A stretch of DNA of 64,000 bases from Macrostomum lignano (Eukaryota), in contig NIVC01000296.1 of assembly GCA_002269645.1 (NCBI GenBank), forward strand, positions 186,001-250,000. Reading direction: 5' to 3'. The notes under the pieces were generated by a model, which made no database searches, was not told the DNA's origin, and saw only the letters and a program-made list of their open reading frames with translations. Numbering within the stretch: the stretch's first letter is position 1; each line of letters begins with the position of its first letter. This document shows positions 1,623 to 63,452 of this stretch, one piece after another. The translations under genes and the position numbers were made by a program.

Positions 1623-2222
1623 ACGCTCGTAATTAAAATGGCGTGAGGTCGGTGCTGGGGCGAGGCAAAAAGCAATGACCTATTGCCGAGCGCTGCATCT
1701 GAGGCTATTTAAGGCAAACAAGGACCAAAAAGGCACAACACAATCCTATCAGCAAAATCCAAAGGGAATGAAAATAACTAGACTAGCCAAAATAGATACT
1801 TTAAATAGAACTAATTTCCGAATGAGTGAATCCAGTTCCTTCATTCGCAGCCAATATAGTTGTAAAACTTAGGAAAAGATTTCCATTGTCTCCGCAATTT
1901 CTTCAACTGTGGCATTGTCAGAAGCCGCCGTCTCGCCCGCCTTGTCCGCTGGCACCTGCCGCCGGTCCTGGCTTCCAGCCGCAGCTTGCCGGCCCTGGCG
2001 TGCCGCACCGCCAGGGCGAAACTCACCGAGTCGTCCAGCCGGGCCAACCGCAAAGATTCTTCCACCTCGACCGCGGGCCGCCCGGCCGACTGCAGCCGCC
2101 AGCGCTCGCTCTTCTCCGTCCGGTGGCGCAGCAGTGCCTCGCGAATTTTCGATCGCGACGCCAGGCTGATGTTCAGCGTCGAGCGCAGCGTCGCTACGAG
2201 GCTGCCGCCGCCGCCGCCGCCG

Positions 2223-3137
2223 TTAGGTCGCAGCAGCCGGAGCAGCTCCTTTCGAGTCTGGCGACGCCTTCGCCGGCGCGCCGCCGAGCCCGGTACCGCC
2301 AGCCGCCAGAGCCGGACAGACGCGCTCGGCCAGCAGGCTGGCCACCCTCGCCGACTCGAAGGCGAGCGTCAGCAGGTCGCGCCGGCAGTGAAGCTTCCGG
2401 CTACGCCGCAGACGACGCCGGGACATGCAGCCGCGGCGGCCCGTTCCAGCGTCGTCCAGAAAGGCCAGCGCGAGGTCCTTGTTGAAGTAGCGGTTCGCCA
2501 GCCTGACGGCCCGGTCTCCGGCTCGGGCGCGGAGTTTGGCGCGCAGCTGGCGCAGCTGGCGCCGAACCCGTCTGGTGAGCGCCGCTTTCTCCAGCGCGTG
2601 CGCCTCCGCGGCCGCCTTGGCAGCCGAGCAGCGCGCGTCAACGTTGGCGCCGCCAGCGGCCTCGCTCTCTCTGAGACGCCGTCGAGTGGCCGAGTTCAGC
2701 GACTCGGTCTCCAAGCGCACCAGGCGGCCGGCGCCGATTTCCACCTGTTCAGTCGGCCTCGTCTCGTTCCGGCGCGTCTTGTCCATCACAGTCCAGCGGA
2801 GACCGTCTGCGTCCACTTTGCGTCGCTCTTCCACCAGGAATACGACTGACTTGGAGCGGCCGCGCAGCTCGCGCCCGTTCTGCGGATGGCTGTCGCTGAT
2901 GCCGAGGTACCAGCGGCTCGCCGCCTTATGACTGCGCGTCCCATTGCCGCCTCCTTTGACGGCAGCGTCCGGCAGGATGGCCCGGTAGAAGGTGGCCACG
3001 GTGAAGCGGCTGCTGGCGGGGCGGTGGCTCCGGTCTGGCAGTGGCAGGTCGGGCAGCAGCCGGCCGCGCCACAGGCAGTTCTCGGGCAGGCGGCCGGACT
3101 CGACTTTCTGCAACGGGGATTGGGGAGGTGGCCTTAA
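2223..3137 (-). CDS. FGF-family ligand, exon 3 (C-terminal half of FGF core plus long basic extension)
   Basis: Acceptor tctacag|TTA at 3137 (phase 0). Encodes ENCLWRGRLL...RWYLGIS...RSKSVVFL, matching the FGF second Cys, WY and terminal F-L strands. TAA at 2225-2223; the true end may be further downstream (see findings). Confidence 0.75.
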   Translation of the reverse strand, partial: LRPPPQSPLQKVESGRLPENCLWRGRLLPDLPLPDRSHRPASSRFTVATFYRAILPDAAVKGGGNGTRSHKAASRWYLGISDSHPQNGRELRGRSKSVVFLVEERRKVDADGLRWTVMDKTRRNETRPTEQVEIGAGRLVRLETESLNSATRRRLRESEAAGGANVDARCSAAKAAAEAHALEKAALTRRVRRQLRQLRAKLRARAGDRAVRLANRYFNKDLALAFLDDAGTGRRGCMSRRRLRRSRKLHCRRDLLTLAFESARVASLLAERVCPALAAGGTGLGGAPAKASPDSKGAAPAAAT

Positions 3138-3608
3138 CTGTAGATACATGTATAAGGTGTCTTATCTACGGAGTTTCTCTTGGATACAACTGCTTAGCAA
3201 CGGGGCTTCCCTTAGATACACTTCTTACAAACAGGGACTAGTTTCGATGACGCAGATGTTGCAGCAGATTTTTAATAGGCATCTAAATAGAGGAACTGCG
3301 ACATGATTGGCAAACTGCCAGATAACAGAGTGGTGCCAATTTTCTCATTGTCTGACGCCATCCTCAATTAGCCGCATCAATAAAAATGTTTAGAAATCGA
3401 ATCCATAATCTAAAAGTGTATGGCTGAATCCTCATACCGTTATTGATGCCCAATTTATCAATTATGAATTATGTTAAAAAATTATTGATTGTAAAGAAAT
3501 TTAAATAGAGAACTTTTTTTGATTGATACTTCTATGAAACTTTAAAACTTCCATGACAAAGATACACTCGCACTGGCGTGAATGCAGTACAGCGTATCCC
3601 TCTGCTGA

Positions 3609-3880
3609 AAGAGCCAGAATTGGGGTGGGCGTGGATTGAACCTCCCGCTGAGGGAGCCAGAATTGGGGTGGGCGTGGATTGAACCTCCCGCTGAGAGAGC
3701 CAGAATTGGGGTTGGGCGTGGATTGAACCTCCCGCTAAGAGAGCCGGAATTGGGGTGGGCGTGGTTGAACCCTCCGCAGGGAGAGCCGAAATTGGGGTGG
3801 GCGTGCTTGAACCCCCGCAGTGAGAGACAGAATTGGGGTGGGCGTGGTTGAACCCCCCCCCCCTACAGAGAGAGAGCCAG
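3609..3880. repeat. ~41-bp minisatellite (GAGAGCCAGAATTGGGGTGGGCGTGGATTGAACCTCCCGCT), ~6 copies, intronic
   Basis: Direct tandem units visible. Confidence 0.92.
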
Positions 3881-3923
3881 AATGGAGTGAGGCGGATGGT
3901 AGTTAATGTACAAAGTTAATTAC

Positions 3924-4081
3924 CGTGGTGTAGACATCCGCCAAGTTGTTCATGCAGATGTAGTGTTTCCCAAAATGGCTTTTGATTAAAAACTTAAATT
4001 CGCCTCTGTCCGAGGCCTTGTCGCCCGGCAGTTGTAGAGGCTGACCAGTGTTAAAGTTTAACACCATCTGGACATTTAGCA
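3924..4081 (-). CDS. FGF-family ligand, exon 2
   Basis: Acceptor cattttccag|TG (phase 1), donor ACG|gtaatt (phase 0). Open frame (V)LNVQMVLNF...EFKFLIKSHFGKHYICMNNLADVYTT containing YICMN as in FGF8/17/18. Confidence 0.75.
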
Positions 4082-4744
4082 CTGGAAAATGTGAAATATG
4101 GGTTCAAGATTGCCGACTGTAAAAATCCGAAATTAAACTCATCGTTTTTAAAATGAATCACTCAACTTTTTGTAGGCGGGAAAGCCTCGTAGAACTTCTC
4201 TACTACTTCGCATTTTGTTTAAGTTGGCAGCGTGCCAAAATGAAAGGAAGAATCTCCCCACAAATATATCCTGAGCGGAGAATCCGCATAAGGTAGCAGG
4301 AGCGGAATGCGTGGGCGGTGGAGCCCTTGTGACTCAATACCCAATTGTGCATTCAATGGGAGCAGAGCTGGACTAAGCAGTGTGAGGGGAGACAAAAGCA
4401 GTGCAGGCTAGAAACCAATTGGCTCGCTTCCAAGTTGGGATTAAAACCTGAATGAAGCTGGGATGATGTTCGCTCCTCTGCTACAAGTTGGCAGGCTGCC
4501 AGAACACGGGTAAATTTGTCTGAAAAATTGCCAGACAAAATAGAATACGGGTGGCAACGTAAATCTCTACTGCAGGCATTTTTATAGGCAGTCGGAAATT
4601 AATAATTAATCATTGCCGGCCTCAGCACGCATTTCCCATTCAATTTGATCAACAATATATAGAGTTGCGATTCCAAAAATTGTCGGCCACGTCGACTGCC
4701 GATATGTGGCGCAGAAAGCTTTCTTAAGAAGCTATTCGACTTGG

Positions 4745-6027
4745 TGTGCTGTTTGTGATGCTGTTTGTGGTGCTGTTTGTGATGCTGTTTGTGATGCTGT
4801 TTGTGATACTGTTTGTGATACTGTTTGTGATACTGTTTGTGATGCTGTTTGTGGTGCTGTTTGTGATGCTGTTTGTGGTGCTGTTTGTGATGCTGTTTGT
4901 GGTGCTGTTTGTGGTGCTGTTTGTGATGCTGTTTGTGATGCTGTTTGTGATGCTGCTTGTGATGCTGTTTGTGATGCTGTTTGTGGTGCTGTTTGTGGTG
5001 CTGTTTGTGGTGCTGCTTGTGATGCTGTTTGTGGTGCTGTTTGTGGTGCTGTTTGTGATGCTGCTTGTGATGCTGTTTGTGATGCTGTTTGTGGTGCTGT
5101 TTGTGATGCTGTTTATGATGCTGCTTGTGATGCTGTTTGTGATGCTGTTTGTGGTGCTGTTTGTGGTGCTGCTTGTGATGCTGTTTGTGATGCTGTTTGT
5201 GGTGCTGTTTGTGGTGCTGTTTGTGGTGCTGTTTGTGGTGCTGTTTGTGGTGCTGTTTGTGGTGCTGTTTGTGGTGCTGTTTGTGGTGCTGTTTGTGGTG
5301 CTGTTTGTGGTGCTGTTTGTGGTGCTGTTTGTGATGCTGTTTGTGATGCTGTTTGTGATGCTGTTTGTGGTGCTGTTTGTGGTGCTGTTTGTGGTGCTGT
5401 TTGTGGTGCTGTTTGTGATGCTGTTTGTGATGCTGTTTGTGGTGCTGTTTGTGGTGCTGTTTGTGGTGCTGTTTGTGGTGCTGTTTGTGGTGCTGTTTGT
5501 GGTGCTGTTTGTGGTGCTTTTTGTGGTGCTGTTTGTGATGCTGTTTGTGATGCTGTTTGTGATGCTGTTTGTGATGCTGTTTGTGATGCTGTTTGTGATG
5601 CTGTTTGTGATGCTGTTTGTGATGCTGTTTGTGATGCTGTTTGTGGTGCTGTTTGTGATGCTGTTTGTGATGCTGTTTGTGATGCTGTTTGTGATGCTGT
5701 TTGTGATGCTGTTTGTGATACTGTTTGTGATACTGTTTGTGATGCTGTTTGTGATGCTGTTTGTGATACTGTTTGTGATACTGTTTGTGGTGCTGTTTGT
5801 GATGCTGTTTGTGGTGCTGCTTGTGATGCTGTTTGTGGTGCTGTTTGTGGTGCTGTTTGTGATACTGTTTGTGGTGCTGTTTGTGGTGCTGCTTGTGATG
5901 CTGTTTGTGGTGCTGTTTGTGGTGCTGTTTGTGGTGCTGCTTGTGATGCTGTTTGTGGTGCTGTTTGTGGTGCTGTTTGTGGTGCTGCTTGTGATGTTGT
6001 TTGTGATGCTGTTTGTGATGCTGTTGG
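4745..6027. repeat. 12-bp minisatellite (TGCTGTTTGTGA/G)n, intronic
   Basis: About 105 units; explains the long low-complexity ORFs on both strands. Confidence 0.97.
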
Positions 6028-6473
6028 TGTTGCTAAAAATTGGGGCTGTTGCGGGGTGCCCAGTGGGCAGTGCACAGTGTTGCAGAAGCTGGAGCACTCG
6101 AAGAGTTCAAGGCAAACAATTAATTGGGGTGAGCACTGACAGTCTGACAGACAGACAGACAGAAACTTGACAAGCTATAAAAACTCAAATATCTCGCTGA
6201 CAGTTTCAAAGGGCCTTTCCAATGCACAGACACATAAAAACAAATATTTCTGTAGCTTCAAAAATCTTATTCGAATTTCATTAAATTTCAGACATTTGTT
6301 GAACTTTGAATCTGAAATTTACTGAGAGACTGTGAAAGAACTTTTGCCAAGTGCAGAGAAACTGAAGGAAGCTGAAAATCTGTACAGCAGTTCACTGTTC
6401 GTCATCAAAACAGCGATTGGTGAAGTTGAAATATGCTTATTGGACACTGCCTCAGCTTACGCAACTGAAAAAT

Positions 6474-7111
6474 CTCACACTGCAACTCACACTGCAACTC
6501 GCACTGCAACTTGCACAGCATCTCACACTGCAACTCACACTGCAACTCGCACTGCAACTCACACTGCAACTCGCACTGCAACTCACACTGCAACTCACAC
6601 TGCAACTCGCACTTCGCAACTCGCACTGCAACTCACACTGCAACTCACACTGCAACTCACACTGCAACTCACACTGCAACTCGCACTGCAACTCACACTG
6701 CAACTCACACTGCAACTCGCACTGCAACTCACACTGCAACTCACACTGCAACTCGCACTGCAACTCGCACTTCGCAACTCACACTGCAACTCACACTGCA
6801 ACTCACACTGCAACTCACACTGCAACTCACACTGCAACTCATACTGCAACTCACACTGCAACTCATACTGCAACTCACACTGCAACTCGCACTTCGCAAC
6901 TCACACTGCAACTCACACTGCAACTCACACTGCAACTCACACTGCAACTCACACTGCATCTCACACTGCAACTCACACTGCATCTCACACTGCAACTCAC
7001 ACTGCAACTTGCACTGCAACTCACACTGCAACTTGCACTGCAACTCACACTGCATCTCACACTGCATCTCACACTGCATCTCACACAGCAACTCTTACTG
7101 CAACTCACACT
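6474..7111. repeat. 12-bp minisatellite (ACTGCAACTCAC)n, intronic
   Basis: About 50 units, with a recurrent frame-shifting TCGCACTTCGCAAC variant. Confidence 0.95.
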
Positions 7112-7161
7112 GATGAAGACACAGAAAGTACAGAAGGACCAAAGAAAGTTCACCGCCTCAC

Positions 7162-7465
7162 CTGTCTCAGCCGTCCAGCCCTGAAACCGTTCGCTGCGCA
7201 GCCGACCCACCGAGCTCACGACCAGCGCCTCGCGCCTCTTAAAGTCGGCGCTATCGAAACCGCTGTTGCTCAGCGTCTCCATGGCCGCCTCGCCGATGCT
7301 GAACCCAACTCGATGCGGACTGGCGCTTCGCCGTATCAGTTTGGCGCCGCCGGCGCTAGTAGGCGCTAATTCTAGCGCCTGCATTGCCGGTCTGGCGCCA
7401 GTGGATTTGATAGAAATTAAAATTATTAGAAGCAAAAGACTGCAAGGGTTCGGACCCGCCAGCAT
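7162..7465 (-). CDS. FGF-family ligand, exon 1 (signal peptide plus start of core)
   Basis: ATG 7465. MLAGPNPCSLLLLIILISIKSTGA looks like a signal peptide; ALVVSSVGRLRS resembles FGF LQI.PDGRV.G. Donor ACAG|gtgagg is phase 1 and joins exon 2 in frame. Confidence 0.7.
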
Positions 7466-10016: not shown

Positions 10017-10253
10017 CTACTTGACCGCAAAGCCCTCCAGCTGCTCCTGCACCAGCAGCGCATGCAGCGGCATGTCCCAGTTGCGCCCGTAGTTCAACTG
10101 GCTGAAGCCGGCGCCGTCGAGACTGGCCTCCGGCTTGTTCAGCAGGCGGCAGTCACAGAACAGCAGCGACCAGGCGGGCTGGCAGAGCCACTGGACCAGT
10201 CGAGCCCAACGCCGAGTAGAGGCTACGTGCTCCAGAAAGATAAACACGCCGTT
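10017..10253 (-). CDS. METTL7: METTL7/TMT1-like SAM-dependent methyltransferase, exon 2
   Basis: Acceptor cccgcag|AAC; NGVFIFLEHVA...QPAWSLLFCDCRL...LEGFAVK*, matching the METTL7A C-terminus (GGVLFFWEHVA...IMGKAVK). Confidence 0.9.
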   Translation of the reverse strand, partial: NGVFIFLEHVASTRRWARLVQWLCQPAWSLLFCDCRLLNKPEASLDGAGFSQLNYGRNWDMPLHALLVQEQLEGFAVK

Positions 10254-10269
10254 CTGCGGGATTTTCGAT

Positions 10270-10470
10270 ATCGCGCATAGAAACCAGCATGGAAACCGCA
10301 TAGCAACCAGTATGAAACGGCACCGAAACCAAGCAAAAAAACCACATAGCAACCAGTATAGAAGTCGCATAACAACCAGCATAAAAACCGCATAGCTACC
10401 GGCATAGAAACTGCATAACAACCAGCATAGAAACCGCAAAGAAACCGCATAGCAACCAGCATAGAAACCG
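10270..10470. repeat. ~23-bp degenerate minisatellite in the METTL7-like intron
   Basis: CATAGAAACCGCATAGCAACCAG-like units. Confidence 0.8.
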
Positions 10471-10498
10471 CATGGCAACAGGGAGAGAGAGCACGCAC

Positions 10499-11011
10499 TG
10501 GCTTGAGCACGCGGGCAATCTCCCCCAACACTCGGTCGGTGTCCCGCACGGAGCACAGCACAAACGTGCCCACAACAGCGTCGAAAGATTCGTCGGGAAA
10601 AGCGTCGACCAGATCTTCGGCGCCGCGGACTAGGTGCCGCTCCAGCCGAATGCTCGGCCACCTGGCGACCTCGGACAGCAGGTAGGGCCGGGTTGCCAGA
10701 CAGGGGTCCACAACGGACAGGAAGATGCGGCCGCGAAACGCGGCCGTCATGAAGGCGAAGTTCGCCCCGGACCCGCCGCCAACCTCCAGAACGCGGATGA
10801 AGCGGCGCCCGGAGAATCTGTCGCCGAGGCAGGCGAACAGCTTCCGCTTCCGGTCCCAGCAGAGAGCGTTGTAAGCCCGGGAAATTCGGTCCATCAGGTG
10901 GGCGTACACCTCGGCGCGGTGGCGGCTGTACAGCAGGACCACGGCGCCGAGGAGGAACACCGCGGCGGCGATGGTTGATGATACAAGCGAGCAGTCAGAC
11001 AGGTGCAACAT
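10499..11011 (-). CDS. METTL7: METTL7/TMT1-like SAM-dependent methyltransferase, exon 1
   Basis: ATG 11011, hydrophobic N-terminal anchor, motif I VLEVGGGSGANF, DESFDAVVGTFVLCSV, EIARVLKP|gtgcgt. Joined product is 249 aa. Confidence 0.92.
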
Positions 11012-22931: not shown

Positions 22932-23524
22932 TCAAATCCGACTCTCGATCTCTTCAAGCGGCGGCGGCTCGTGCGCCGGGAACTGGTCGTGATAGGTCAG
23001 GGGTTCGATTCCAGTAGCCGGGGCAGCGGAGGTCGACGCAGCGGAGTCTGCGGCGGGAGCGACAATGATGGTTGGAGGCGGCGTGTGCATCGGCTGCTGC
23101 TGCTGGCCATAGTCGGCGATCTCCCCGCCAACTAAGAACGTGGAGGCGGCATTCGGACTATAGTTGTTATTGTTGCCATGGTAACTGTGCGAGCCGCTGT
23201 ATGACGCCGTCTCGTCGTTATTAGCAGCGGCCGCTCTTGCAGCTCTGGCCGCCTCCCACTGGCTGAGGGCGCGAAGGGGGAAGCCGGCCAGGCCCGACAG
23301 CGCCAGCAGGGCGCCGGCTGCGTAGAAGGAGGCCGCCAGGCCCGGCCCGCCCACTGGCCCCAGAGCCGCCGCCGGCGCCCAGCCATTAGCGAAGGTGGCT
23401 GTCAAAGGTGGCCCGACGACCAGGCCGGCGCCTTGGATCAGCAGGAGGAGGCCGAAGGCGTTGGTCAGGCGGTCCAAGCCCATCAGGTCCACCACCAGAA
23501 TGGTGCGTAGGGAGGTCCATGCGG
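22932..23524 (-). CDS. SLC16: SLC16 monocarboxylate transporter (MFS), exon 8 (last)
   Basis: gccgcag|CC; (S)AWTSLRTILVVDLMGLDRLTNAFGLLLLIQGAGLVVGPPL is the typical MCT TM10-11 motif; TGA at 22934-22932. Confidence 0.92.
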
Positions 23525-27125: not shown

Positions 27126-27166
27126 AAATATGGCCTAGGTACCCTCTAGATAGCTAGAGCGCCCAC

Positions 27167-27754
27167 CTCCTCGGTGATTTCAGTCGAGCCGCTCAGCAGA
27201 GCCATCGCGGCCCCGTTGATTGCCGCCGGCCCGCCAGCTGCCGAAGTTGCCGTGCCGGCTAGAGACGTGCCCGACGCAAAATTCGATTGATCAGGCGTCG
27301 GAACTTCGGAATTGAGCGCCGTGTGCGGCTGCAGCGGCGCGCCGACCAGATGCGGCTGATTCGCTGCCGGATCATTGCTGCTGACGCCGCCGACTGCTAG
27401 AGAAGTTTGGCTTTGGGCGAAGTCGCCGACGCCTGCGCCGCCGCTAATGCCTCCGCTCACGCCGCTGACGCCGCCGCCTCCGCCTCTGACGGTAGCAGCC
27501 AGCTGAGACAGGCTGCCCTTGGCTGTGGCGGCCGCCTCGGCCAGGAAGCTGTGCCTGCTAGTTAAACGACGCGATCCTGCGCCGGAAGCAGCCGCAGCCG
27601 CTGTCGCAGCAGAATAGCCGGGCGTTTTCCTGCGCAGAACATTCTCGGCTATGCGGTGGATCGCCTCCATGCTGAGCATTGGCCGGTCATCAAAGTCTGG
27701 GGGCGGCGGCTCCACCCGATTAGCCGTAGTGATGATCCAGCCGTTTAGGGAGCC
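27167..27754 (-). CDS. SLC16: SLC16 transporter, exon 4 (large cytoplasmic loop)
   Basis: aacgcag|GGC...GAG|gtgggc, 196 open codons, phase 0/0, in frame with both flanking exons. Confidence 0.8.
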
Positions 27755-33216: not shown

Positions 33217-36200
33217 AACTAGCTGACTAACTGACTGACTAACTGACTAACTGACTAACTGACTAACTGACTAACTGACTAACTGACTGACTGACTAACT
33301 GACTAACTGACTAACTGACTGACTGACTAACTGACTAACTGACTAACTGACTGACTGACTAACTGACTAACTGACTAACTGACTAACTGACTAACTGACT
33401 AACTGACTAACTGACTGACTAACTGACTGACTAACTGACTAACTGACTAACTGACTAATCTGGTTTTCTATAGCACCTAGCATATTTATTTTTGTGCAAG
33501 GCTTTAGCTGCAAGACTTTAACCAATCAGCTTGCTTCAACTCACGTTTTTAACTAATTTTACGTACACATCTTTACTCAACACTGCTCAGTGCACCCCAA
33601 AAAGTCGCATATATATATTGAAATTATGTTAAAATAACTTCACAGCCAATATATTTGTTTTTAAACCCGAATAAATAAACCCTGATAAAGGCCCAGTCTG
33701 GGCCGAAATATCGGTTTCTGAATATTCGACAACTAACGTTCTTCAATATTTCCGTGTGTGTGGTTTGCAGTTTGAAGCTGCCTTTTGCATAACTGACTAA
33801 CTGACTAACTGACTGACTGACTAACTGACTAACTGACTGACTAACTGACTGACTAACTGACTAACTGACTAACTGACTGACTGACTAACTGACTGACTAA
33901 CTGACTGACTGACTGACTGACTGACTGACTGACTGACTGACTGACTGACAGACCGACTGACTAACTAACTAACTAACTGACTAACTAACTGACTAACTGA
34001 CTAACTAACTAACTGACTGACTAACTGACTAACTAACTGACTGACTGACTAACTGACTGACTGACTAACTGACTGACTGACTGACTGACTAACTGACTAA
34101 CTGACTGACTAACTGACTAACTAACTAACTGACTGACTAACTGACTGACTGACTAACTGACTAACTAACTAACTGACTGACTAACTGACTGACTGACTAA
34201 CTGACTAACTGACTGACTGACTAACTGACTGACTGACTAACTGACTGACTAACTGACTAACTGACTGACTGACTAACTGACTAACTGACTGACTGACTGA
34301 CTAACTGACTAACTAGCTAGCTGACTAACTGACTAACTGACTGACTGACTGACTGACTAACTAACTGACTGACTAACTGACTAACTAGCTAGCTGACTAA
34401 CTGACTAACTCACTGACTGACTGACTGACTGACTAACTAACTGACTGACTGACTGACTGACTGACTGACTGACTGACTGACTGACTGACTGACTGACTGA
34501 CTGACTGACTGACTGACTGTATAACTGACTGACTAACTGACTAACTGACTGACTAACTGACTAACTAGCTAGCTGACTAACTGACTAACTGACTGACTAA
34601 CTGACTAACTATTGCTAGCTGAGCTGAACAATAGCTAGCTGACTAACTGACTAACTAACTAACTGACTAGATAACTAACTAACTGACTAACTAACTGACT
34701 AACTGACTAACTAACTAACTGACTGACTAACTGACTAACTGACTGACTGACTGACTGACTGACTGACTGACTGACTGACTGACTGACTGACTGACTGACT
34801 GACTGACTGACTGACTAACTGACTGACTGACTGACTGACTGACTGACTGACTGACTGACTGACTGACTGACTGACTGACTGACTGACTGACTGACTGACT
34901 GACTGACTGACTGACTGACTGACTGACTGACTGACTGACTGACTGACTGACTGACTGACTGACTAACTGACTGACTGACTAACTGACTGACTGACTGACT
35001 AACTGACTGACTAACTGACTAACTGACTGACTGACTAACTGACTAACTGACTGACTGACTGACTAACTGACTAACTAGCTAGCTGACTAACTGACTAACT
35101 GACTGACTGACTGACTGACTGACTAACTGACTGACTGACTGACTGACTGACTGACTGACTGACTGACTGACTGACTGACTGACTGACTGACTAACTAACT
35201 GACTAACTGACTGACTGACTGACTGACTGACTAACTGACTGACTGACTAACTGACTGACTGACTGACTAACTGACTGACTAACTGACTAACTGACTGACT
35301 GACTAACTGACTAACTGACTGACTGACTGACTAACTGACTAACTAGCTAGCTGACTAACTGACTAACTGACTGACTGACTGACTGACTGACTAACTAACT
35401 GACTGACTAACTGACTAACTAGCTAGCTGACTAACTGACTAACTCACTGACTGACTGACTGACTGACTAACTAACTGACTGACTGACTGACTGACTGACT
35501 GACTGACTGACTGACTGACTGACTGACTGACTGACTGACTGACTGACTGACTAACTGACTGACTGACTGACTGACTGACTGACTGACTGACTGACTAACT
35601 GACTGACTAACTGACTAACTGACTGACTAACTGACTAACTAGCTAGCTGACTAACTGACTAACTGACTGACTAACTGACTAACTATTGCTAGCTGAGCTG
35701 AACAATAGCTAGCTGACTAACTGACTAACTAACTAACTGACTAGATAACTAACTAACTGACTAACTAACTGACTAACTGACTAACTAACTAACTGACTGA
35801 CTAACTGACTAACTAACTGACTGACTGACTGACTGACTGACTGACTGACTGACTGACTGACTGACTGACTGACTGACTGACTGACTGACTGACTGACTGA
35901 CTGACTGACTGACTGACTGACTGACTGACTGACTGACTGACTGACTAACTGACTGACTGACTGACTGACTGACTGACTGACTGACTGACTGACTGACTGA
36001 CTGACTGACTGACTGACTGACTGACTGACTGACTGACTGACTGACTGACTGACTGACTGACTAACTGACTAACTAGCTAGCTGACTAACTGACTAACTCA
36101 CTGACTGACTGACTGACTGACTAACTGACTGACTGACTGACTGACTGACTGACTGACTGACTGACTGACTGACTGACTGACTGACTAACTAACTGACTAA

Positions 36201-39200
36201 CTGACTGACTGACTGACTGACTGACTGACTAACTGACTGACTAACTAACTGACTAACTGACTGACTAACTGACTAACTGACTGACTGACTAACTGACTAA
36301 CTAACTAACTGACTGACTAACTGACTGACTGACTAACTGACTGACTAACTGACTAACTAGCTAGCTGACTAACTGACTAACTAACTAACTGACTAGATAA
36401 CTAACTAACTGACTAACTAACTAACTAACTGACTAACTGACTGACTGACTGACTGACTAACTGACTGACTAACTGACTGACTAACTGACTAACTGACTGA
36501 CTAACTGACTAACTAGCTAGCTGACTAACTGACTAACTGACTGACTAACTGACTAACTATTGCTAGCTGAGCTGAACAATAGCTAGCTGACTAACTGACT
36601 AACTAACTAACTGACTAGATAACTAACTAACTGACTAACTAACTAACTAACTGACTAACTGACTGACTGACTAACTGACTGACTAACTGACTGACTGACT
36701 GACTGACTAACTAACTAACTAACTGACTAACTGACTGACTGACTGACTGACTGACTAACTGACTGACTAACTGACTGACTAACTGACTGACTGACTGACT
36801 AACTGACTAACTAGCTAGCTGACTAACTGACTAACTAACTAACTGACTAGATAACTAACTAACTGACTAACTAACTAACTAACTAACTGACTGACTAACT
36901 AACTGACTAACTGACTGACTGACTGACTGACTGACTGACTGACTGACTGACTGACTGACTGACTGACTGACTGACTGACTGACTGACTGACTGACTGACT
37001 GACTGACTGACTGACTGACTGACTGACTGACTGACTGACTAACTGACTAACTAGCTAGCTGACTAACTGACTAACTCACTGACTGACTGACTGACTGACT
37101 AACTGACTGACTGACTGACTGACTGACTGACTGACTGACTGACTGACTGACTGACTGACTAACTAACTGACTAACTGACTGACTGACTGACTGACTGACT
37201 GACTAACTGACTGACTAACTAACTGACTAACTGACTGACTAACTGACTGACTGACTGACTGACTAACTGACTAACTAACTAACTAACTGACTAACTGACT
37301 GACTAACTGACTAACTGACTAACTGACTGACTGACTAACTGACTAACTGACTGACTGACTAACTGACTAACTAACTAACTGACTGACTAACTGACTAACT
37401 GACTGACTGACTAACTGACTAACTAACTAACTGACTGACTGACTAACTGACTAACTAACTAACTGACTGACTAACTGACTAACTGACTGACTGACTGACT
37501 AACTGACTAACTAACTAACTGACTGACTAACTGACTAACTGACTGACTGACTAACTGACTAACTGACTGACTGACTGACTGACTGACTGACTGACTGACT
37601 AACTAACTGACTAACTGACTGACTGACTGACTGACTGACTGACTAACTGACTGACTGACTGACTAACTGACTGACTGACTGACTAACTGACTGACTAACT
37701 GACTAACTGACTGACTGACTAACTGACTAACTGACTGACTGACTGACTAACTGACTAACTAGCTAGCTGACTAACTGACTAACTGACTGACTGACTGACT
37801 GACTGACTAACTAACTGACTGACTAACTGACTAACTAGCTAGCTGACTAACTGACTAACTCACTGACTGACTGACTGACTGACTAACTAACTGACTGACT
37901 GACTGACTGACTGACTGACTGACTGACTGACTGACTGACTGACTGACTGACTGACTGACTGACTGACTGACTGACTGACTGACTAACTGACTGACTGACT
38001 GACTGACTGACTGACTGACTGACTGACTGACTAACTGACTGACTAACTGACTAACTGACTGACTAACTGACTAACTAGCTAGCTGACTAACTGACTAACT
38101 GACTGACTAACTGACTAACTATTGCTAGCTGAGCTGAACAATAGCTAGCTGACTAACTGACTAACTAACTAACTGACTAGATAACTAACTAACTGACTAA
38201 CTAACTGACTAACTGACTAACTAACTAACTGACTGACTAACTGACTAACTAACTGACTGACTGACTGACTGACTGACTGACTGACTGACTGACTGACTGA
38301 CTGACTGACTGACTGACTGACTGACTGACTGACTGACTGACTGACTGACTGACTGACTGACTGACTGACTGACTAACTGACTGACTGACTGACTGACTGA
38401 CTGACTGACTGACTGACTGACTGACTGACTGACTGACTGACTGACTGACTGACTGACTGACTGACTGACTGACTGACTGACTAACTGACTAACTAGCTAG
38501 CTGACTAACTGACTAACTCACTGACTGACTGACTGACTGACTAACTGACTGACTGACTGACTGACTGACTGACTGACTGACTGACTGACTGACTGACTGA
38601 CTGACTAACTAACTGACTAACTGACTGACTGACTGACTGACTGACTGACTAACTGACTGACTAACTGACTGACTAACTGACTGACTAACTGACTGACTGA
38701 CTGACTGACTAACTGACTAACTAACTAACTGACTGACTAACTGACTGACTGACTAACTGACTGACTAACTGACTAACTAGCTAGCTGACTAACTGACTAA
38801 CTAACTAACTGACTAGATAACTAACTAACTGACTAACTAACTAACTAACTGACTAACTGACTGACTGACTGACTAACTGACTGACTGACTGACTGACTGA
38901 CTAACTAACTGACTGACTAACTGACTAACTAGCTAGCTGACTAACTGACTAACTGACTGACTAACTGACTAACTATTGCTAGCTGAGCTGAACAATAGCT
39001 AGCTGACTAACTGACTAACTAACTAACTGACTAGATAACTAACTAACTGACTAACTAACTAACTAACTGACTAACTGACTGACTGACTAACTGACTGACT
39101 AACTGACTGACTGACTGACTGACTAACTAACTAACTAACTGACTAACTGACTGACTGACTGACTGACTGACTAACTAACTGACTGACTGACTAACTGACT

Positions 39201-40531
39201 AACTAACTAACTGACTGACTAACTGACTAACTGACTGACTGACTGACTAACTGACTAACTAACTAACTGACTGACTAACTGACTAACTGACTGACTGACT
39301 GACTGACTGACTGACTGACTGACTGACTGACTGACTGACTGACTGACTAACTAACTGACTAACTGACTGACTGACTGACTGACTGACTGACTAACTGACT
39401 GACTGACTGACTAACTAACTGACTGACTGACTAACTGACTGACTAACTGACTAACTGACTGACTGACTAACTGACTAACTGACTGACTGACTGACTAACT
39501 GACTAACTAGCTAGCTGACTAACTGACTAACTGACTGACTGACTGACTGACTGACTAACTAACTGACTGACTAACTGACTAACTAGCTAGCTGACTAACT
39601 GACTAACTCACTGACTGACTGACTGACTGACTAACTAACTGACTGACTGACTGACTGACTGACTGACTGACTGACTGACTGACTGACTGACTGACTGACT
39701 GACTGACTGACTGACTGACTGACTGACTGACTGACTAACTGACTGACTGACTGACTGACTGACTGACTGACTGACTGACTGACTAACTGACTGACTAACT
39801 GACTAACTGACTGACTAACTGACTAACTAGCTAGCTGACTAACTGACTAACTGACTGACTAACTGACTAACTATTGCTAGCTGAGCTGAACAATAGCTAG
39901 CTGACTAACTGACTAACTAACTAACTGACTAGATAACTAACTAACTGACTAACTAACTGACTAACTGACTAACTAACTAACTGACTGACTAACTGACTAA
40001 CTGACTGACTGACTAACTGACTAACTGACTGACTGACTAACTGACTAACTGACTAACTGACTGACTAACTGACTGACTAACTGACTGACTAACTGACTAA
40101 CTAGCTAGCTGACTAACTGACTAACTGACTGACTGACTGACTGACTGACTGACTGACTGACTAACTGACTAACTGACTGACTGACTGACTGACTGACTGA
40201 CTGACTGACTGACTGACTGACTAACTGACTGACTAACTGACTGACTGAATAACTGACTGACTAACTGACTAACTGACTGACTAACTGACTAACTAGCTAG
40301 CTGACTAACTGACTAACTGACTGACTGACTGACTGACTGACTGACTGACTAACTGACTAACTAGCTAGCTGACTAACTGACTAACTGACTGACTAACTGA
40401 CTGACTGACTGACTGACTGACTGACTGACTGACTGACTGACTAACTGACTGACTAACTAACTGACTAACTGACTGACTAACTGACTGACTGACTGACTAA
40501 CTAACTAACTGACTAGATAACTAACTAACTG

Positions 40532-40566
<35 letters not shown>

Positions 40567-40571
40567 GACTG

Positions 40572-40638
<67 letters not shown>

Positions 40639-40690
40639 GACTGACTGACTAACTAACTAACTAACTGACTAACTGAGTAATGAACTAACT
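33217..40690. repeat. ~7-kb (GACT/AACT)n tetranucleotide array, interrupted by a unique island at ~33458-33789
   Basis: Mixed CTGA/CTAA units with recurrent landmark variants; lies in SLC16 intron 1. Confidence 0.98.
33677..33717 (+). ncRNA. Minimal type-I hammerhead ribozyme-like motif (Penelope-like element type), G8A core variant
   Basis: AAACC-CTGATAAA-GGCCCAG(T)CTGGGCC-GAAA-TA-TC-GGTTT: stem I AAACC/GGTTT, stem II, GAAA box, palindromic ATAT stem III, AUC cleavage triplet. Confidence 0.6.
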
Positions 40691-40776
40691 AGCTAAAAAT
40701 CTAACCAACAGTACTAGCTATTTAACTAACAATTTAACTAATGATTAAGGAGCTAATGAACTCCAATTGAACTCAC

Positions 40777-41158
40777 CAAACAGCATGTAGGCGCCAAACA
40801 CGGTGCTGCCGATCAGAGACAGCTCTGCCGGCCCCCTGCCAGCAAAGGATTCGCTAATCCGGTCGCGAGCTACGCTAAAAAACGAATAGCAAAAGCCGTC
40901 AACAAGGCCGTGGCAGAGGAATGCGCCAAGCACAATGAACCAAGCGTAGCCCTTGTCCGGCGGGCTGGGAGGCCCGGCCGCGTCCACACCAGCCGGTGGC
41001 AGCGACGCTGTCGCCTGGGGAGGATTGGGATTCGGCGAAGTAAAATAACTGTAGGATTCTGCCGCTGACTGCGGCGGCTGCTGATGCTGAGGGTCTGGTG
41101 GTTCGGCAACCGCCTGGCCAGCAGCTGCAGGCGGCTGCTGCTGCTGCGGATTCGTCAT
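40777..41158 (-). CDS. SLC16: SLC16 transporter, exon 1 (first coding exon)
   Basis: ATG 41158; PPDKGYAWFIVLGAFLCHGLVDG is the MCT N-terminal PPDGGWGW motif; TTT G|gtgagt. Eight exons give about 880 aa. Confidence 0.92.
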
Positions 41159-41590
41159 GATCGAGAAGTTCAACAGCTCTGAGTCTTATTTTTGCAGAAT
41201 TTCAAACTGAAAATTTAATTTAAAAAAACTTATTTAGCGAATAAACTTGGGCCAAAACGAATCATGAGCTCATTTAGTAATGTTCTATTTTTAGAAACCC
41301 GACGAGTACTGGCCTAAGTACTTGCAACTTAAAATTAGTATTAAGTAAGTACAACAATAGTCCACTGTCTCGACAAGTTGAAATAGACTATAAATAGAAT
41401 CATATTGTCATATTCTTTATGTACAGTGACAATACATATCCAAGAAAAGTCTGCTCACTTCTATATCTAGTGTGCTGTGTGCTGTGTTTGACACAATGCA
41501 CACTACATAGTATGTTCTCTTAAAATTGCACAATACCTAAATTAGTTTTCCATTATGCAACATATACTAATCATAATAATTGATTACTGA

Positions 41591-59707: not shown

Positions 59708-61558
59708 TCAAATCACGGAGGTTGAAAATGCGGTCTCGTCGTGTACATCGTAGAGTCCCACAAAGCCTCCATCAGCGTTGGCGTCGTCTTTCAACTGCGC
59801 GATCTCGGCGAAGACGCTGGCCAACGGCTGGAACTGCGGCTGCCAGGCTGTCAGGTGCGACGGCAGCCGGGGCTGAGCCGTGTTCAGCCCGACGGGGAAG
59901 CCGCCGACTCCGCTGACGCCGTTGGAGCCACCGAAGCCAGCGGCACCAGCGGCAGCCCGCGGCAGCTCCAGCAGGCTGGGCACCGGGGTGGCTTGGTACG
60001 GATCCTCGCTCCACAGGCTGGCCGCGGAGTGGAATCGCCTGCCGGCGCCAGCGCTCAGAGGCGACGGTCGCAGCTCCGGGGTCACGCCAAGCCGGTGCAG
60101 ATACTCTCGATGGTCCTTAGGCAAGGAGGCTCCGTCAGTCTGTCCTGTCGATATGAAATTCAGCGGCTGCTGTTGCTGCTGCTGGTGGTGATGCAGCTGC
60201 TGCGATTGATGGTCTTCGTCTGACGCGGCGCTGCCAAGTCCGGAGCTGTGCGCGGTGCCGCTCAGTCGAGTCAACTCCGTCATTGTCCTCGGCGGCGGCC
60301 TCGGCGGTTGGAGTCCGGCGGCCGCCGCGGCAACGACAGCGGCCACGTTCTGGTCGAAGCACGAGTCGTACAGCGTGGAATTGGGCGATGCTGAGTTTGC
60401 GGCTCCTGCCGCGGCCGCTGCCTCCCTTCTCTTGGCTCGACTCGAATGCAGACCGCGCTTTCCAGCCAGTTGCCGGCGGCGATGCACGCAGACTGCCACG
60501 ACTACCGCGACGACAATGATAGCAACCAAGACGAAGAGGCCTGCGAGGATGGCAGCCAGCGGTGGAGTGGCAAGGCCTGTCGAGGGTGGCTTCATCTCCA
60601 GCGGCACTGGCATGGTCAGCTGGACGACTGCGTCGGTGAACAGAGCCACGCTGCTGGCACGCACTCGGAGGCTGTAGTTCGCCAGCACCGTGTCATCAGC
60701 TGCCGCCGCATTGAAAGCTCGCGCCAGGTAAACTTCGCCCGTGCTGGTGTTCACGCTGAACCGTCCGGCAGCCGCTTCGCTGTCGGCGTCGCAGTCCACG
60801 CCAGTCAGCGAGAAAGCAACCCGGCCGGCCGACCCGGCGTCCCTGTCCGAGGCGGCCAGACGAATTAGCGACTGTCCGATTGGTGGTGTGGATGCCAGGT
60901 TCAGCCGGTACTCGGCCAGGTCGAAGACCGGTTGGAACTCGTCGACATCCTGCACCAGCATCAGCAGCTGCTGCCTCTCCGCGCCAGCGCTGCAGTTGAG
61001 CCGCAGGCTGTAGGCAGTCGTGTTCTCGTAGTCGAGCATCCTCAGCGTTGTCAAGCGACCCGATTTGAGTTCGAACTCCGGACTGGCCGGCTCAACTGCG
61101 CAGTCGGTCGGCAGTTTGTCGCTGACCAGTGACCAGGCTGCGAGGCCTTCGCTCACCAGCAGAGCCAGCGGGTTCGCCGGTAGCGACGGCGCAGAAGCCG
61201 CAGCGTCGGTGAGAACCCGAAGACTGAGGCGGGCGAGGCTGGACAGCCGGACGTCGGAAGCGCGGACGAGGAATTCGAAGCCGACAAAGCCGGCGGCGCT
61301 GTCAGATGCGTCGATCTGAACCTCCGGCGGAGTCGAAAGTAGCGACACTCCCCCGCTTGCGGAATCTACGCCGAGCAGCGTCCCGTTGCCAAGCAACCGG
61401 TAGGTCACCTGACCGTTGATGCCGACGTCTGGGTCGTTCGCGGCCACCGTCAGGAGGCGAGATCCAACGGAGGCGGCCGCGGTGGACGCGACGAGGCTGG
61501 TTGCGTAGGGATCGCCAACGAACTTCGGCGCATTGTCGTTGGCGTCCTGCACCAAAAC
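59708..61558 (-). CDS. ds: Dachsous protocadherin, last exon (final cadherin repeats, TM, cytoplasmic tail)
   Basis: cccgcag|GTT; DANDNAP, DPDVGING, DYE, DVDEFQP, DRDAG cadherin motifs; TM; SSGLGSAASDED and WQPQFQPLASVFAEIAQLKD match Dachsous/DCHS intracellular motifs. Confidence 0.93.
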   Translation of the reverse strand, partial: VLVQDANDNAPKFVGDPYATSLVASTAAASVGSRLLTVAANDPDVGINGQVTYRLLGNGTLLGVDSASGGVSLLSTPPEVQIDASDSAAGFVGFEFLVRASDVRLSSLARLSLRVLTDAAASAPSLPANPLALLVSEGLAAWSLVSDKLPTDCAVEPASPEFELKSGRLTTLRMLDYENTTAYSLRLNCSAGAERQQLLMLVQDVDEFQPVFDLAEYRLNLASTPPIGQSLIRLAASDRDAGSAGRVAFSLTGVDCDADSEAAAGRFSVNTSTGEVYLARAFNAAAADDTVLANYSLRVRASSVALFTDAVVQLTMPVPLEMKPPSTGLATPPLAAILAGLFVLVAIIVVAVVVAVCVHRRRQLAGKRGLHSSRAKRREAAAAAGAANSASPNSTLYDSCFDQNVAAVVAAAAAGLQPPRPPPRTMTELTRLSGTAHSSGLGSAASDEDHQSQQLHHHQQQQQQPLNFISTGQTDGASLPKDHREYLHRLGVTPELRPSPLSAGAGRRFHSAASLWSEDPYQATPVPSLLELPRAAAGAAGFGGSNGVSGVGGFPVGLNTAQPRLPSHLTAWQPQFQPLASVFAEIAQLKDDANADGGFVGLYDVHDETAFSTSVI

Positions 61559-62368: not shown

Positions 62369-62905
62369 GCCGCGCTCCTCAGCTGATTGACAGCAGCAGG
62401 GGGAGAGTTTGCCTGGCTTGAGTGTCCTTTCCCAGCCCGGCAACCAGACACTCCTCTTGCTCCCCCCCCCTTCCTGCTTGTCGCGCACAATAAATGGCAC
62501 AAGCGGCGGCCCTCTGACTACGCAGAATTCATTCTCTTCTTTAGATTCTCCCAACATGCTCACCCCAGCGTGAGGGATGCTGCAGTGAGCTGCTGACAGT
62601 CCCTTCCTGTGTTGGTACTTTGGAACCCGCAAAACTGCATTAGGACTGAACTATATTAGCTTTAACTATGAGTAATTCTATAGAGATTCCAATTCTGTCC
62701 TTTTTATTCATTTTATTGTTTGCTGGCACCTGTGCTTTTTTGCCAGTTGATTTAGGGAAATACCATCCAATGACTATGGGCATATGCGGATTTGAATTTT
62801 GTACTTTTAAACCGTTTTGCATGGCTTTTTTAAATTTCATTACATCTCCCATCTCTCTCTCTATATATATATCCTGACTCCAACTCAATCTCAATCCTCT
62901 CTCAC

Positions 62906-63417: not shown

Positions 63418-63452
<35 letters not shown>

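What the first reader, a model, noticed from the sequence alone, without database searches (positions are those of the whole stretch)
2223..7465. Cryptic, highly divergent secreted FGF ligand with insertion-rich core and a long basic tail
Seen: exons 7465-7162, 4081-3924 and 3137-2223 splice in frame (phase 1, then phase 0) into 458 aa with an N-terminal hydrophobic signal-like segment. Established: the FGF core has these two introns at comparable positions and phases, and the motifs V.I.....G.YICMN..G.L (FGF8/17/18), C.F.E..L, WY.[AG][LIF] and a terminal ..FL strand. All are found here in order (FLIKSHFGKHYICMNNLADVY | ENCLWRGRLL | RWYLGIS | SKSVVFL), separated by unusually long loop insertions. 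Inference: an FGF8/17/18-like ligand with a ~200+ aa Arg-rich extension containing dibasic sites, reminiscent of long-tailed invertebrate FGFs (Pyramus/Thisbe, LET-756). It is invisible in the ORF track because exon 2 is short and the introns are filled with minisatellites. If the host is a flatworm, where FGF ligands are hard to detect by similarity, this is a strong developmental/regeneration candidate.
Basis: partly seen in the sequence, partly recalled or inferred. Interest (0 to 1): 0.82.

Follow-up and report, generated by a model that had tools for sequence, protein, structure and literature searches.

The report
Divergent flatworm FGF-like secreted protein gene
This is a real three-exon gene for a secreted protein whose core is a very divergent, loop-expanded relative of fibroblast growth factors, followed by a long basic tail. 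Its only known relative is an unnamed protein of the flatworm Macrostomum lignano, so it is a candidate for an FGF signal in flatworms, where such ligands have been hard to find.

Summary
The gene model is real. The three minus-strand exons splice in frame with canonical GT/AG sites. Exon 2 shows frame-specific codon bias. A search of 1.84 billion proteins found one relative, a 607-aa 'hypothetical protein' of Macrostomum lignano, whose gene has introns 1 and 2 at the same codons and phases.

The FGF reading is supported for about two thirds of the domain:
- Pfam FGF is the only family hit on the core of both proteins, but below threshold (E 0.013-0.018, about 15 bits against a cut-off of 24).
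- A two-species profile aligns to an FGF profile over strands beta5-beta12. Score 38-40, P 6e-6 to 2.5e-5, against a maximum of 22 in 400 shuffles.
- With loop insertions removed automatically, Pfam FGF scores 35-43 bits. Seven shuffled controls gave no FGF hit.
- Intron 2 lies exactly where it does in FGF genes.

Not shown: the N-terminal third of the domain, the beta-trefoil fold (AlphaFold pLDDT 36-39), and any ligand activity.

One correction. The stop at 2223 follows a 1-nt frameshift between 2331 and 2275. Homology and codon bias continue in the shifted frame to a stop at 1843-1841. That gives about 586 aa with a conserved tail of about 325 aa carrying cysteines and glycosylation sequons.

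The parts
7162..7465 (-). Coding exon 1 (residues 1-101 plus the first base of codon 102). It holds the start ATG at 7465-7463, the signal-like segment (residues 1-24, 7465-7394) and a conserved dibasic RR-S at residues 45-47.
   Evidence: Translation and splice donor CAG|GTGAGG. Hydrophobic segment CSLLLLIILISI. Aligns with the N-terminus of the M. lignano protein, which ends its exon 1 at the same codon and phase.
4082..7161 (-). Intron 1 (phase 1), mostly two 12-bp minisatellites (6474-7112 and 4747-6034).
   Evidence: GT..AG boundaries. Tandem Repeats Finder.
3924..4081 (-). Coding exon 2 (158 nt, residues 102-154). It holds VLNVQMVL, a loop, then FKFLIKSHFGKHYICMNNLADVYTT (FGF strands beta5-beta7).
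   Evidence: GC3 0.64 against GC2 0.28. tblastn with P0001 hits 4082-3921 at E 5e-6. Pfam FGF's best stretch is residues 133-154. The following intron is phase 0, nine residues after the Met of YICMN, as in FGF2 (gene structure from my own knowledge).
3138..3923 (-). Intron 2 (phase 0), with a 43-bp minisatellite at 3604-3858.
   Evidence: ACG|GTAATT .. TCTACAG|. Tandem Repeats Finder. Same aligned position and phase in M. lignano.
2835..3137 (-). First part of exon 3 (residues 155-255), the rest of the FGF-like core. It holds ENCLWRGRLL (beta8), FY (beta9), RWYLGIS (beta10) and SKSVVFL (beta12), separated by three lineage-specific loop insertions. A conserved sequon NGT lies at residue 219.
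   Evidence: hhalign places query 125-255 on FGF columns 43-125. Loop-excised Pfam FGF 35.1 bits. tblastn E 4e-13.
2297..2834 (-). Exon 3 continued in the model frame: the proximal part of the Arg/Ala-rich tail. It holds conserved Cys324, the motif RRVRRQLRQLR (furin-type R-x-R-R at residues 344-347) and C..RDLLTLAFESARVASLL.
   Evidence: P0001 residues 271-384 align to 2720-2331 in this frame. GC3 0.73-0.90. Motif positions.
2275..2331 (-). Zone that contains a 1-nt frameshift (a real mutation or an assembly error). It is too short and GC-rich to hold an intron.
   Evidence: The homology to P0001 changes frame between 2331 and 2275. GC3 switches frame here. Sequence inspection shows no workable GT..AG pair.
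1841..2296 (-). Distal tail in the shifted frame, ending at the stop TGA 1843-1841. It holds RRRRRRQTRKELL, the conserved sequon LNISL, and the C-terminal FPKFYNYIGCE.
   Evidence: P0001 residues 415-594 align to 2275-1847 at E 1.4e-9. GC3 0.80-0.90 in this frame. Corrected alignment.

Best explanation
The locus is a protein-coding gene of a flatworm related to, but distinct from, Macrostomum lignano. It encodes a secreted protein of about 586 aa (458 aa as the sequence stands).

Shown:
- The exon structure.
- Relatedness to an M. lignano gene with the same two intron positions and phases (I treat it as the ortholog, though a divergent paralog is not excluded).
- A hydrophobic N-terminus in both species.
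- Statistically supported homology of residues about 125-255 to strands beta5-beta12 of the FGF domain, interrupted by lineage-specific loops.
- A conserved tail of about 325 aa with no known domain.

Inferred mechanism:
- The protein enters the secretory pathway. Supporting features are a signal peptide, conserved N-x-T/S sequons in the core and tail, and conserved cysteines.
- The core folds as an FGF-type beta-trefoil.
- It acts as a ligand for flatworm FGF receptors or FGFR-like proteins, with heparan sulfate as cofactor.
- The basic tail limits diffusion, or is removed at a conserved R-x-R-R site, as proposed for the long-tailed Drosophila FGFs Pyramus and Thisbe.
For: Gene model:
- In-frame splicing and canonical sites.
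- Exon 2 GC3 bias.
- Independent tblastn recovery of exons 2 and 3.
- Identical intron positions and phases in M. lignano locus L001.

Single relative: an exhaustive phmmer search gave one hit, P0001 (PAA71187.1, hypothetical protein, M. lignano), at E 6e-16.

FGF homology:
- Pfam FGF is the only core hit: E 0.018 (window) and 0.013 (M. lignano).
- hhalign of the two-species profile against six FGFs gives score 38.3, P 2.5e-5, probability 75%. With M. lignano as master it gives 39.9, 5.9e-6, 85%.
- 400 column shuffles gave mean 12.5, sd 2.3, maximum 22.2. Reversed profiles gave 15-16.
- After automatic removal of loop insertions, Pfam FGF scores 35.1 bits (E 1.5e-8) and 42.7 bits (E 6.7e-11), above the cut-off of 24. 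Seven shuffled controls through the same pipeline gave no FGF hit.
- The same trimmed sequences hit FGF8b (8.4e-10), FGF18 and more than 100 FGF chains, or consensus FGF (1.3e-3) and FGF18, in the PDB.
- Gene structure: phases 1 then 0 around a short central exon. Intron 2 lies nine residues after the Met of Y-x-x-M, as in human FGF2 (between codons 94 and 95; from my own knowledge).

Secretion: hydrophobic N-termini in both species and conserved sequons GN[GS]T and LN[IV]SL.
Against: - The native sequences score only 12.5-15.9 bits on Pfam FGF, below the cut-off of 24.
- The window protein alone is barely above noise in hhalign: 18.8 against shuffles of 10-19.5.
- A profile search of PDB sequences with the untrimmed two-species alignment found no FGF. 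phmmer with the native core found none either.
- The N-terminal third (beta1-beta4) is not significant on its own: 9.5 against 7.2 +/- 1.7.
- Both AlphaFold2 models are unreliable (pLDDT 36 and 39). Foldseek gave nothing significant; the top hit, FGF1, had E 0.86.
- Loop excision was guided by an FGF alignment, so its E-values are optimistic.
- The reading frame is broken as assembled.
- There are no expression, receptor-binding or functional data.
Confidence: 0.72

Rival explanations
1. It is a Macrostomum-lineage secreted protein unrelated to FGFs. The YICMN / C.W / WYLG / F-hydrophobic motif series is chance or convergent similarity in a beta-rich protein.
For: - The native Pfam score is below threshold.
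- No FGF turned up in PDB searches with the native sequence or profile.
- No beta-trefoil model was obtained.
- The N-terminal third is not significant.
- Only two effective sequences support the profile.
- No other relative was found among 1.84 billion proteins.
Against: - FGF is the only Pfam family on the core of both proteins, out of 24,736 models.
- The hhalign score lies about 11 sd above 400 shuffles.
- The match is collinear over about 80 columns covering eight strands.
- Loop-excised sequences pass Pfam's cut-off, while shuffled controls do not hit at all.
- Intron 2 position and phase match FGF genes.
Confidence: 0.2
2. It is an FGF-derived gene that is no longer functional in this genome: a pseudogene or decaying duplicate. 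The frameshift between 2331 and 2275 is real.
For: - The frame breaks relative to the M. lignano relative.
- In the window protein the putative beta1-beta2 region is less hydrophobic than in M. lignano.
- The window protein alone matches FGF profiles more weakly than M. lignano's.
Against: - There is only one frame disruption in about 1.76 kb of coding sequence.
- Strong GC3 bias (0.80-0.90) persists after the shift.
- Homology persists to the very C-terminus, including FP.FY....C.
- All four splice sites are intact.
- A 1-nt indel in a (GGC)n-like, 75% GC stretch is a typical assembly error.
- Even if the frameshift is real, the truncated 458-aa product keeps the whole core.
Confidence: 0.1
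3. It is a true FGF-fold protein that does not signal through FGFR tyrosine kinases. It might be a matrix-bound or heparan-sulfate-bound factor, a ligand or decoy for FGFR-like (nou-darake type) proteins, or have a function carried by the conserved tail.
For: - Receptor-contact regions cannot be recognised.
- Large loop insertions lie between beta4/5, beta7/8, beta8/9 and beta9/10.
- The tail is as long as 325 aa, is conserved at 29% identity with shared cysteines, and has no known domain.
Against: Nothing speaks directly against it. Secreted FGFs with a signal peptide generally act through FGFRs, and long-tailed invertebrate FGFs do so too (my own knowledge).
Confidence: 0.25

Closest known systems
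Macrostomum lignano hypothetical protein BOX15_Mlig028597g1 (PAA71187.1, 607 aa), with its near-identical copy Mlig024534g2 (PAA64592.1)
   Same: It is the only detectable relative (E 6e-16). Identity is 27% in the N-terminus, 43% in the core and 29% in the tail. Signal-like N-terminus, RR-S site, core motifs, tail landmarks, and introns 1 and 2 at the same codons and phases are all shared.
   Different: The M. lignano gene has a third intron in the tail (after residue 439) that is absent here. Its loops are shorter. Its frame is intact. It is unannotated (no Pfam domain on record) and has never been called an FGF.
FGF family (Pfam PF00167), nearest to the FGF8/17/18 subfamily
   Same: The match to strands beta5-beta12 is collinear and includes Y-I-C-M-N, C-x-[FW], W-Y-[LVM]-[GA] and the terminal F-hydrophobic strand. 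The protein has a signal peptide. A short central exon is flanked by phase-1 and phase-0 introns, and intron 2 is at the identical position. FGF8b and FGF18 are the best solved-structure matches of the trimmed M. lignano protein.
   Different: The native score is below Pfam's cut-off. Four loops are expanded, and the central exon is 158 nt instead of about 104 nt. The conserved Glu of C-x-F-x-E is Gly. The N-terminal third is unrecognisable in the window protein. A C-terminal domain of about 325 aa is present. No phylogeny was made, so the subfamily is not established.
Long-tailed invertebrate FGFs (Drosophila Pyramus, Thisbe and Branchless; C. elegans LET-756)
   Same: The architecture is shared: signal peptide, N-terminal FGF domain, then a C-terminal extension of several hundred residues with basic and dibasic sites. 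This rests on my own knowledge of those proteins.
   Different: This tail has conserved cysteines and sequons and looks like a folded or helical domain rather than a low-complexity spacer.
[quoted passage not shown] 2020, cited in PMC8662385 and PMC9257043)
   Same: It is a flatworm FGF ligand found late, because flatworm FGFs escape ordinary similarity searches. PMC6426264 (2019) states that none had been identified in flatworm genome projects.
   Different: The exhaustive phmmer search returned no planarian protein, so any relationship is too distant for single-sequence detection.

Membership tests
FGF (Pfam PF00167) | The native sequence reaches the curated Pfam gathering score (24 bits). 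| tested here: not met
   Native scores are 12.5 bits (full length) and 15.5 bits (core) for the window protein, and 12.6 and 15.9 bits for M. lignano. FGF is nevertheless the only family reported on the core of both. This is an operational threshold that long loop insertions defeat, not a structural feature.
FGF (Pfam PF00167) | Statistically supported, collinear homology to the FGF core profile. | tested here: met
   hhalign gives score 38.3-39.9, P 2.5e-5 to 5.9e-6, over FGF columns 43-125 of 136. 400 shuffles reached at most 22.2. After automatic loop excision Pfam FGF scores 35.1 and 42.7 bits over profile positions 44/45-115/124, and 7 shuffled controls gave no hit. Trimmed sequences hit FGF chains in the PDB. 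This covers beta5-beta12 only.
FGF (Pfam PF00167) | The N-terminal third of the domain (strands beta1-beta4) is present. | tested here: inconclusive
   hhalign on this part alone scores 9.5 against shuffles of 7.2 +/- 1.7, maximum 13.8. M. lignano shows a plausible QL..R..GK.L.L..N.R register with FGF8. The window protein is more degenerate here.
FGF (Pfam PF00167) | Twelve-stranded beta-trefoil fold. | tested here: inconclusive
   AlphaFold2 with alignments of 3-4 sequences gave pLDDT 36.2 and 39.0. Foldseek against the PDB gave no match below E 0.86. The low-confidence models do place strands where the FGF alignment expects them.
FGF (Pfam PF00167) | Conserved gene structure: three core coding exons, intron 1 in phase 1 before beta4, intron 2 in phase 0 after beta7. 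| tested here: met
   The flatworm side was measured. Phase 1 falls at codon 102 and phase 0 after residue 154, identical in M. lignano. Intron 2 is nine residues after the Met of YICMN, as in FGF2 (S94|K95). Intron 1 matches within a few residues, depending on an uncertain alignment. The FGF side rests on my own knowledge (FGF2 intron 1 in codon 60, 104-nt exon 2). PMC2119192 confirms only three coding exons for FGF1.
FGF (Pfam PF00167) | Secretion signal, as in paracrine FGFs. | tested here: met
   N-terminal hydrophobic stretches occur in both species: mean hydropathy 3.2 and 2.1 over 12 residues. Sequons are conserved. No dedicated signal-peptide predictor was available.
FGF (Pfam PF00167) | Binds FGF receptors and heparan sulfate, and activates ERK. 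| not testable with these tools
   This needs recombinant protein and receptor assays.
FGF8/17/18 subfamily | Groups with FGF8/17/18 in a phylogeny, and shares subfamily motifs. | tested here: inconclusive
   The YICMN motif is shared. Best PDB hits of the trimmed M. lignano protein are FGF8b (8.4e-10) and FGF18 (4.8e-7). For the window protein they are consensus FGF and FGF18. FGF8 was the master sequence of the template alignment, which may bias this. No tree was made.
Long-tailed invertebrate FGFs (Pyramus/Thisbe type) | N-terminal FGF domain plus a long C-terminal extension that is cleaved off. | not tested
   The architecture matches, and a conserved R-x-R-R site exists (RVRR at 344-347; RSRR in M. 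lignano). Tail homology and cleavage were not tested, because no sequences of those proteins were at hand.

The most novel reading that the evidence does not exclude
This gene and its M. lignano relative would be the endogenous FGF ligand of macrostomid flatworms, a very divergent branch of the family with a new conserved C-terminal domain. A profile built from them and from other Macrostomum transcriptomes could then expose equally cryptic FGFs in planarians and in parasitic flatworms. Schistosomes and tapeworms are currently said to have FGF receptors but no ligand of their own.
Probability: 0.3. Interest if true: 0.8.

Novelty: new member of a known kind. Interest (0 to 1): 0.6.

Why it matters
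Flatworms have FGF receptors and FGFR-like genes that control stem cells and brain patterning, but their ligands have been elusive. PMC6426264 (2019) and PMC9257043 (2022) state that no endogenous FGF ligand is known in tapeworms or schistosomes. A single planarian FGF was reported only in 2020.

A recognisable, if very divergent, FGF-like gene in Macrostomum gives an experimentally tractable regeneration model a ligand candidate for in situ, RNAi and receptor-binding tests. It also gives a seed for profile searches in other flatworms.

It further shows how far an FGF core can drift, through loop expansion and an added tail domain, while keeping its intron positions.

Tried and rejected
1. The word-index homolog search with the full 458 aa found nothing. 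With the two-species alignment it found only a frameshifted copy of the same M. lignano gene.
2. phmmer or profile searches of PDB sequences with the native core or the alignment found no FGF.
3. Two AlphaFold2 runs gave pLDDT 36 and 39, which is unusable. The Foldseek result was therefore meaningless.
4. I tried to explain the frame change near 2300 by a short intron. It was rejected: the only GT..AG pair would give a 29-nt intron in 75% GC sequence.
5. An exact look-up of the exon 3 ORF in public assemblies found nothing on record.
6. Species identification through the neighbouring cadherin gene returned only distant vertebrate protocadherins. The host is therefore inferred only as a flatworm related to M. 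lignano, and not M. lignano itself.
7. Synteny with the M. lignano locus showed only shared satellite-like matches.
8. The tail searched against Pfam and the PDB gave nothing.
9. A literature check of FGF intron phases found only partial confirmation.

Full report
**Observation**

On the minus strand, 7465-7162, 4081-3924 and 3137-2223 join into a 1377-nt ORF of 458 aa.
- The donors are CAG|GTGAGG and ACG|GTAATT. The acceptors are TTTTCCAG| and TCTACAG|.
- The intron phases are 1 and 0.
- Residues 8-19 (CSLLLLIILISI) form a signal-like hydrophobic segment.
- Both introns are largely minisatellite: 12-bp units at 6474-7112 and 4747-6034, and a 43-bp unit at 3604-3858.
- Exon 2 looks unlike the GC-rich exons 1 and 3 (46% against 60% and 70% GC). 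However, its third codon positions are 64% GC against 28% at second positions. That is the codon bias seen in the other genes of the window, where GC3 is 0.62-0.83.

**Is it a gene?**

An exhaustive phmmer search of 1.84 billion representative proteins, using residues 1-309, found exactly one relative. It is a 607-aa 'hypothetical protein' of Macrostomum lignano, PAA71187.1 (BOX15_Mlig028597g1), which has a 99%-identical second copy.
- tblastn with that protein against the window picks out exon 3 (E 4e-13) and exon 2 at 4082-3921 (E 5e-6), with no prior knowledge of the model.
- I fetched the M. lignano locus. Its first intron splits the aligned codon in phase 1: AAT G|GTGAGC ... CAG|CT, which is Ala98 before LEIQMVL. 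In the window it is Val102 before LNVQMVL.
- Its second intron is phase 0 after FVHTV. In the window it follows DVYTT.
- The model is therefore confirmed by conservation across two species that share only 27-43% protein identity.

**Correction of the 3' end**

- Third-position GC switches frame at the same place.
- The 56 nt in between cannot hold an intron, so there is a 1-nt frameshift, either real or an assembly error.
- With it bridged, the protein is about 586 aa and ends ...FPKFYNYIGCE at a stop at 1843-1841. M. lignano ends ...FPSFYFDLRCNE....
- The M. lignano gene has a third intron, after residue 439, that the window lacks.

**Is it an FGF?**

Native sequence:
- Pfam FGF is the only family hit on the core of both proteins, but below threshold: E 0.018 at 15.5 bits, and E 0.013 at 15.9 bits, against a cut-off of 24.
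- On the full-length proteins FGF scores E 0.15 and 0.14; the full-length window protein also gives a weak tail hit to DUF7739 at E 0.14.

Profile-profile comparison:
- I built a six-member FGF alignment of FGF8b, FGF18, a consensus FGF, FGF9, FGF2 and FGF1. The first four were checked against PDB entries. FGF1 and FGF2 were written from memory and not checked there.
- hhalign of the two-species profile against it gives score 38.3, P 2.5e-5, probability 75%. With M. lignano as master it gives 39.9, 5.9e-6, 85%.
- The alignment pairs FKFLIKSHFGKHYICMNNLADVY with strands beta5-7, ENCLWRGRLL with beta8, FY with beta9, RWYLGIS with beta10, and SKSVVFL with beta12.
- 400 column shuffles gave mean 12.5, sd 2.3, maximum 22.2. 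Reversed profiles gave 15-16.
- Each sequence alone is weak: window 18.8 and M. lignano 26.3, against shuffles up to 19.5. The signal therefore comes from positions conserved between the two proteins.

Loop excision:
- HMMER penalises long insertions. I therefore removed, automatically, every query insertion longer than 5 residues in an extended hhalign alignment, and rescanned.
- Pfam FGF then scores 35.1 bits (E 1.5e-8, profile positions 45-124) for the window protein. It scores 42.7 bits (E 6.7e-11) for M. lignano.
- Seven shuffled sequences put through the same pipeline gave no FGF hit at E up to 10.
- The trimmed M. lignano core hits FGF8b (8.4e-10), FGF18 (4.8e-7) and over 100 other FGF chains in the PDB. 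The trimmed window core hits a consensus FGF (1.3e-3) and FGF18 (5.5e-3).
- These trimmed scores are optimistic, because the trimming was guided by an FGF alignment. The controls show that the procedure does not create hits.

Gene structure:
- In human FGF2 the first intron interrupts codon 60 in phase 1, just before beta4. The second lies between codons 94 and 95 in phase 0, nine residues after the Met of YLAM. This is from my own knowledge. PMC2119192 confirms only that FGF1 has three coding exons.
- Here intron 2 lies nine residues after the Met of YICMN, in phase 0.
- Intron 1 has the right phase. Its position matches within a few residues, but the alignment is uncertain there.
- Exon 2 is 158 nt instead of about 104 nt, and the surplus corresponds to extra residues after the acceptor and in the beta4-beta5 loop.

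**What is not shown**

- The N-terminal third of the domain is not significant on its own: 9.5 against 7.2 +/- 1.7.
- Searches of PDB sequences with the native core or the untrimmed profile found no FGF.
- AlphaFold2 with these shallow alignments gave pLDDT 36 and 39.
- Foldseek gave nothing below E 0.86. The beta-trefoil fold is therefore untested.
- Nothing here bears on receptor binding.

**The tail**

- After the core come about 325 residues rich in Arg, Ala and Leu. They are 29% identical to M. lignano.
- Shared landmarks are a Cys in C..AK, V.RQLRQLR preceded by an R-x-R-R site, C.R..L...F.SA.VA.L, the sequon LN[IV]SL, and the C-terminal FP.FY....C.
- The tail has no Pfam or PDB match.
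- Conserved sequons and cysteines fit a luminal or extracellular location (inference).

**Most likely mechanism (inferred)**

- The protein is a secreted FGF-fold ligand.
- Its basic tail restricts its range or is cleaved off, as in Drosophila Pyramus and Thisbe.
- It would act on flatworm FGFR or FGFR-like proteins.

The rivals are listed separately with probabilities: chance similarity, a decaying gene copy, and an FGF fold with a different partner.

**Context and novelty**

- PMC6426264 (2019) states that no canonical FGF ligand had been found in flatworm genome projects.
- PMC9257043 (2022) says the same for Schistosoma mansoni.
- One planarian gene, Djfgf, was described in 2020 (cited in PMC8662385 and in bioRxiv 10.1101/2024.11.26.625069).
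- The M. lignano relative is unannotated.
- I file this as a new, very divergent member of the FGF family. Family membership is supported for two thirds of the domain and is unproven at the level of fold and function.

**Host**

The only relative is from Macrostomum. The neighbouring cadherin has no close match in the protein database. The source is therefore probably a related flatworm rather than M. lignano itself.

Noticed in passing
window 7333-7325 (residues 45-47): A dibasic motif followed by Ser (LIRR-S here, KYRR-S in M. lignano) is conserved about 20 residues after the signal-like segment. It could be a propeptide cleavage site.
   Followed up: partly
window 1-64000: About 23 kb (36%) of the window is tandem repeat with TRF score of at least 200. 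This includes a 6.9-kb (ACTG)n-type array at 33792-40680. Exons stand out as 60-75% GC islands in a background of about 40% GC.
   Followed up: partly
window 10223-11011 (-): An ORF with a SAM-dependent methyltransferase domain (Methyltransf_11, E 5e-10) lies upstream of the FGF-like gene. Its 3' part runs into a 23-bp minisatellite (10274-10473) that reads as repetitive Cys/Phe-rich sequence.
   Followed up: partly
window 59708-61555 and 62891-63967 (-): Two large exons of a cadherin or protocadherin-like gene (Cadherin domain, E 3e-15 and 5e-17) encode a transmembrane segment and a Gln/Ala-rich cytoplasmic tail. The best database matches are only 25-28% identical vertebrate protocadherins.
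   Followed up: partly
window 22932-23495, 27146-27715 and 40745-41173 (-): GC-rich ORFs have no Pfam hit. By eye the ends resemble the N- and C-terminal membrane segments of a monocarboxylate-transporter-type protein. If they are one gene, its introns hold the 6.9-kb microsatellite.
   Followed up: no
L001 24094-24437 (M. lignano locus): The M. lignano relative has a third, phase-0 intron in the tail (after GGRK439) that is absent from the window gene. This is an intron gain or loss between the two species.
   Followed up: yes
P0004 (UniRef A0A1I8F4U7, M. lignano): An older M. lignano gene model of the same locus is riddled with frameshifts. It carries the misleading source name 'FH2 domain-containing protein'.
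   Followed up: partly
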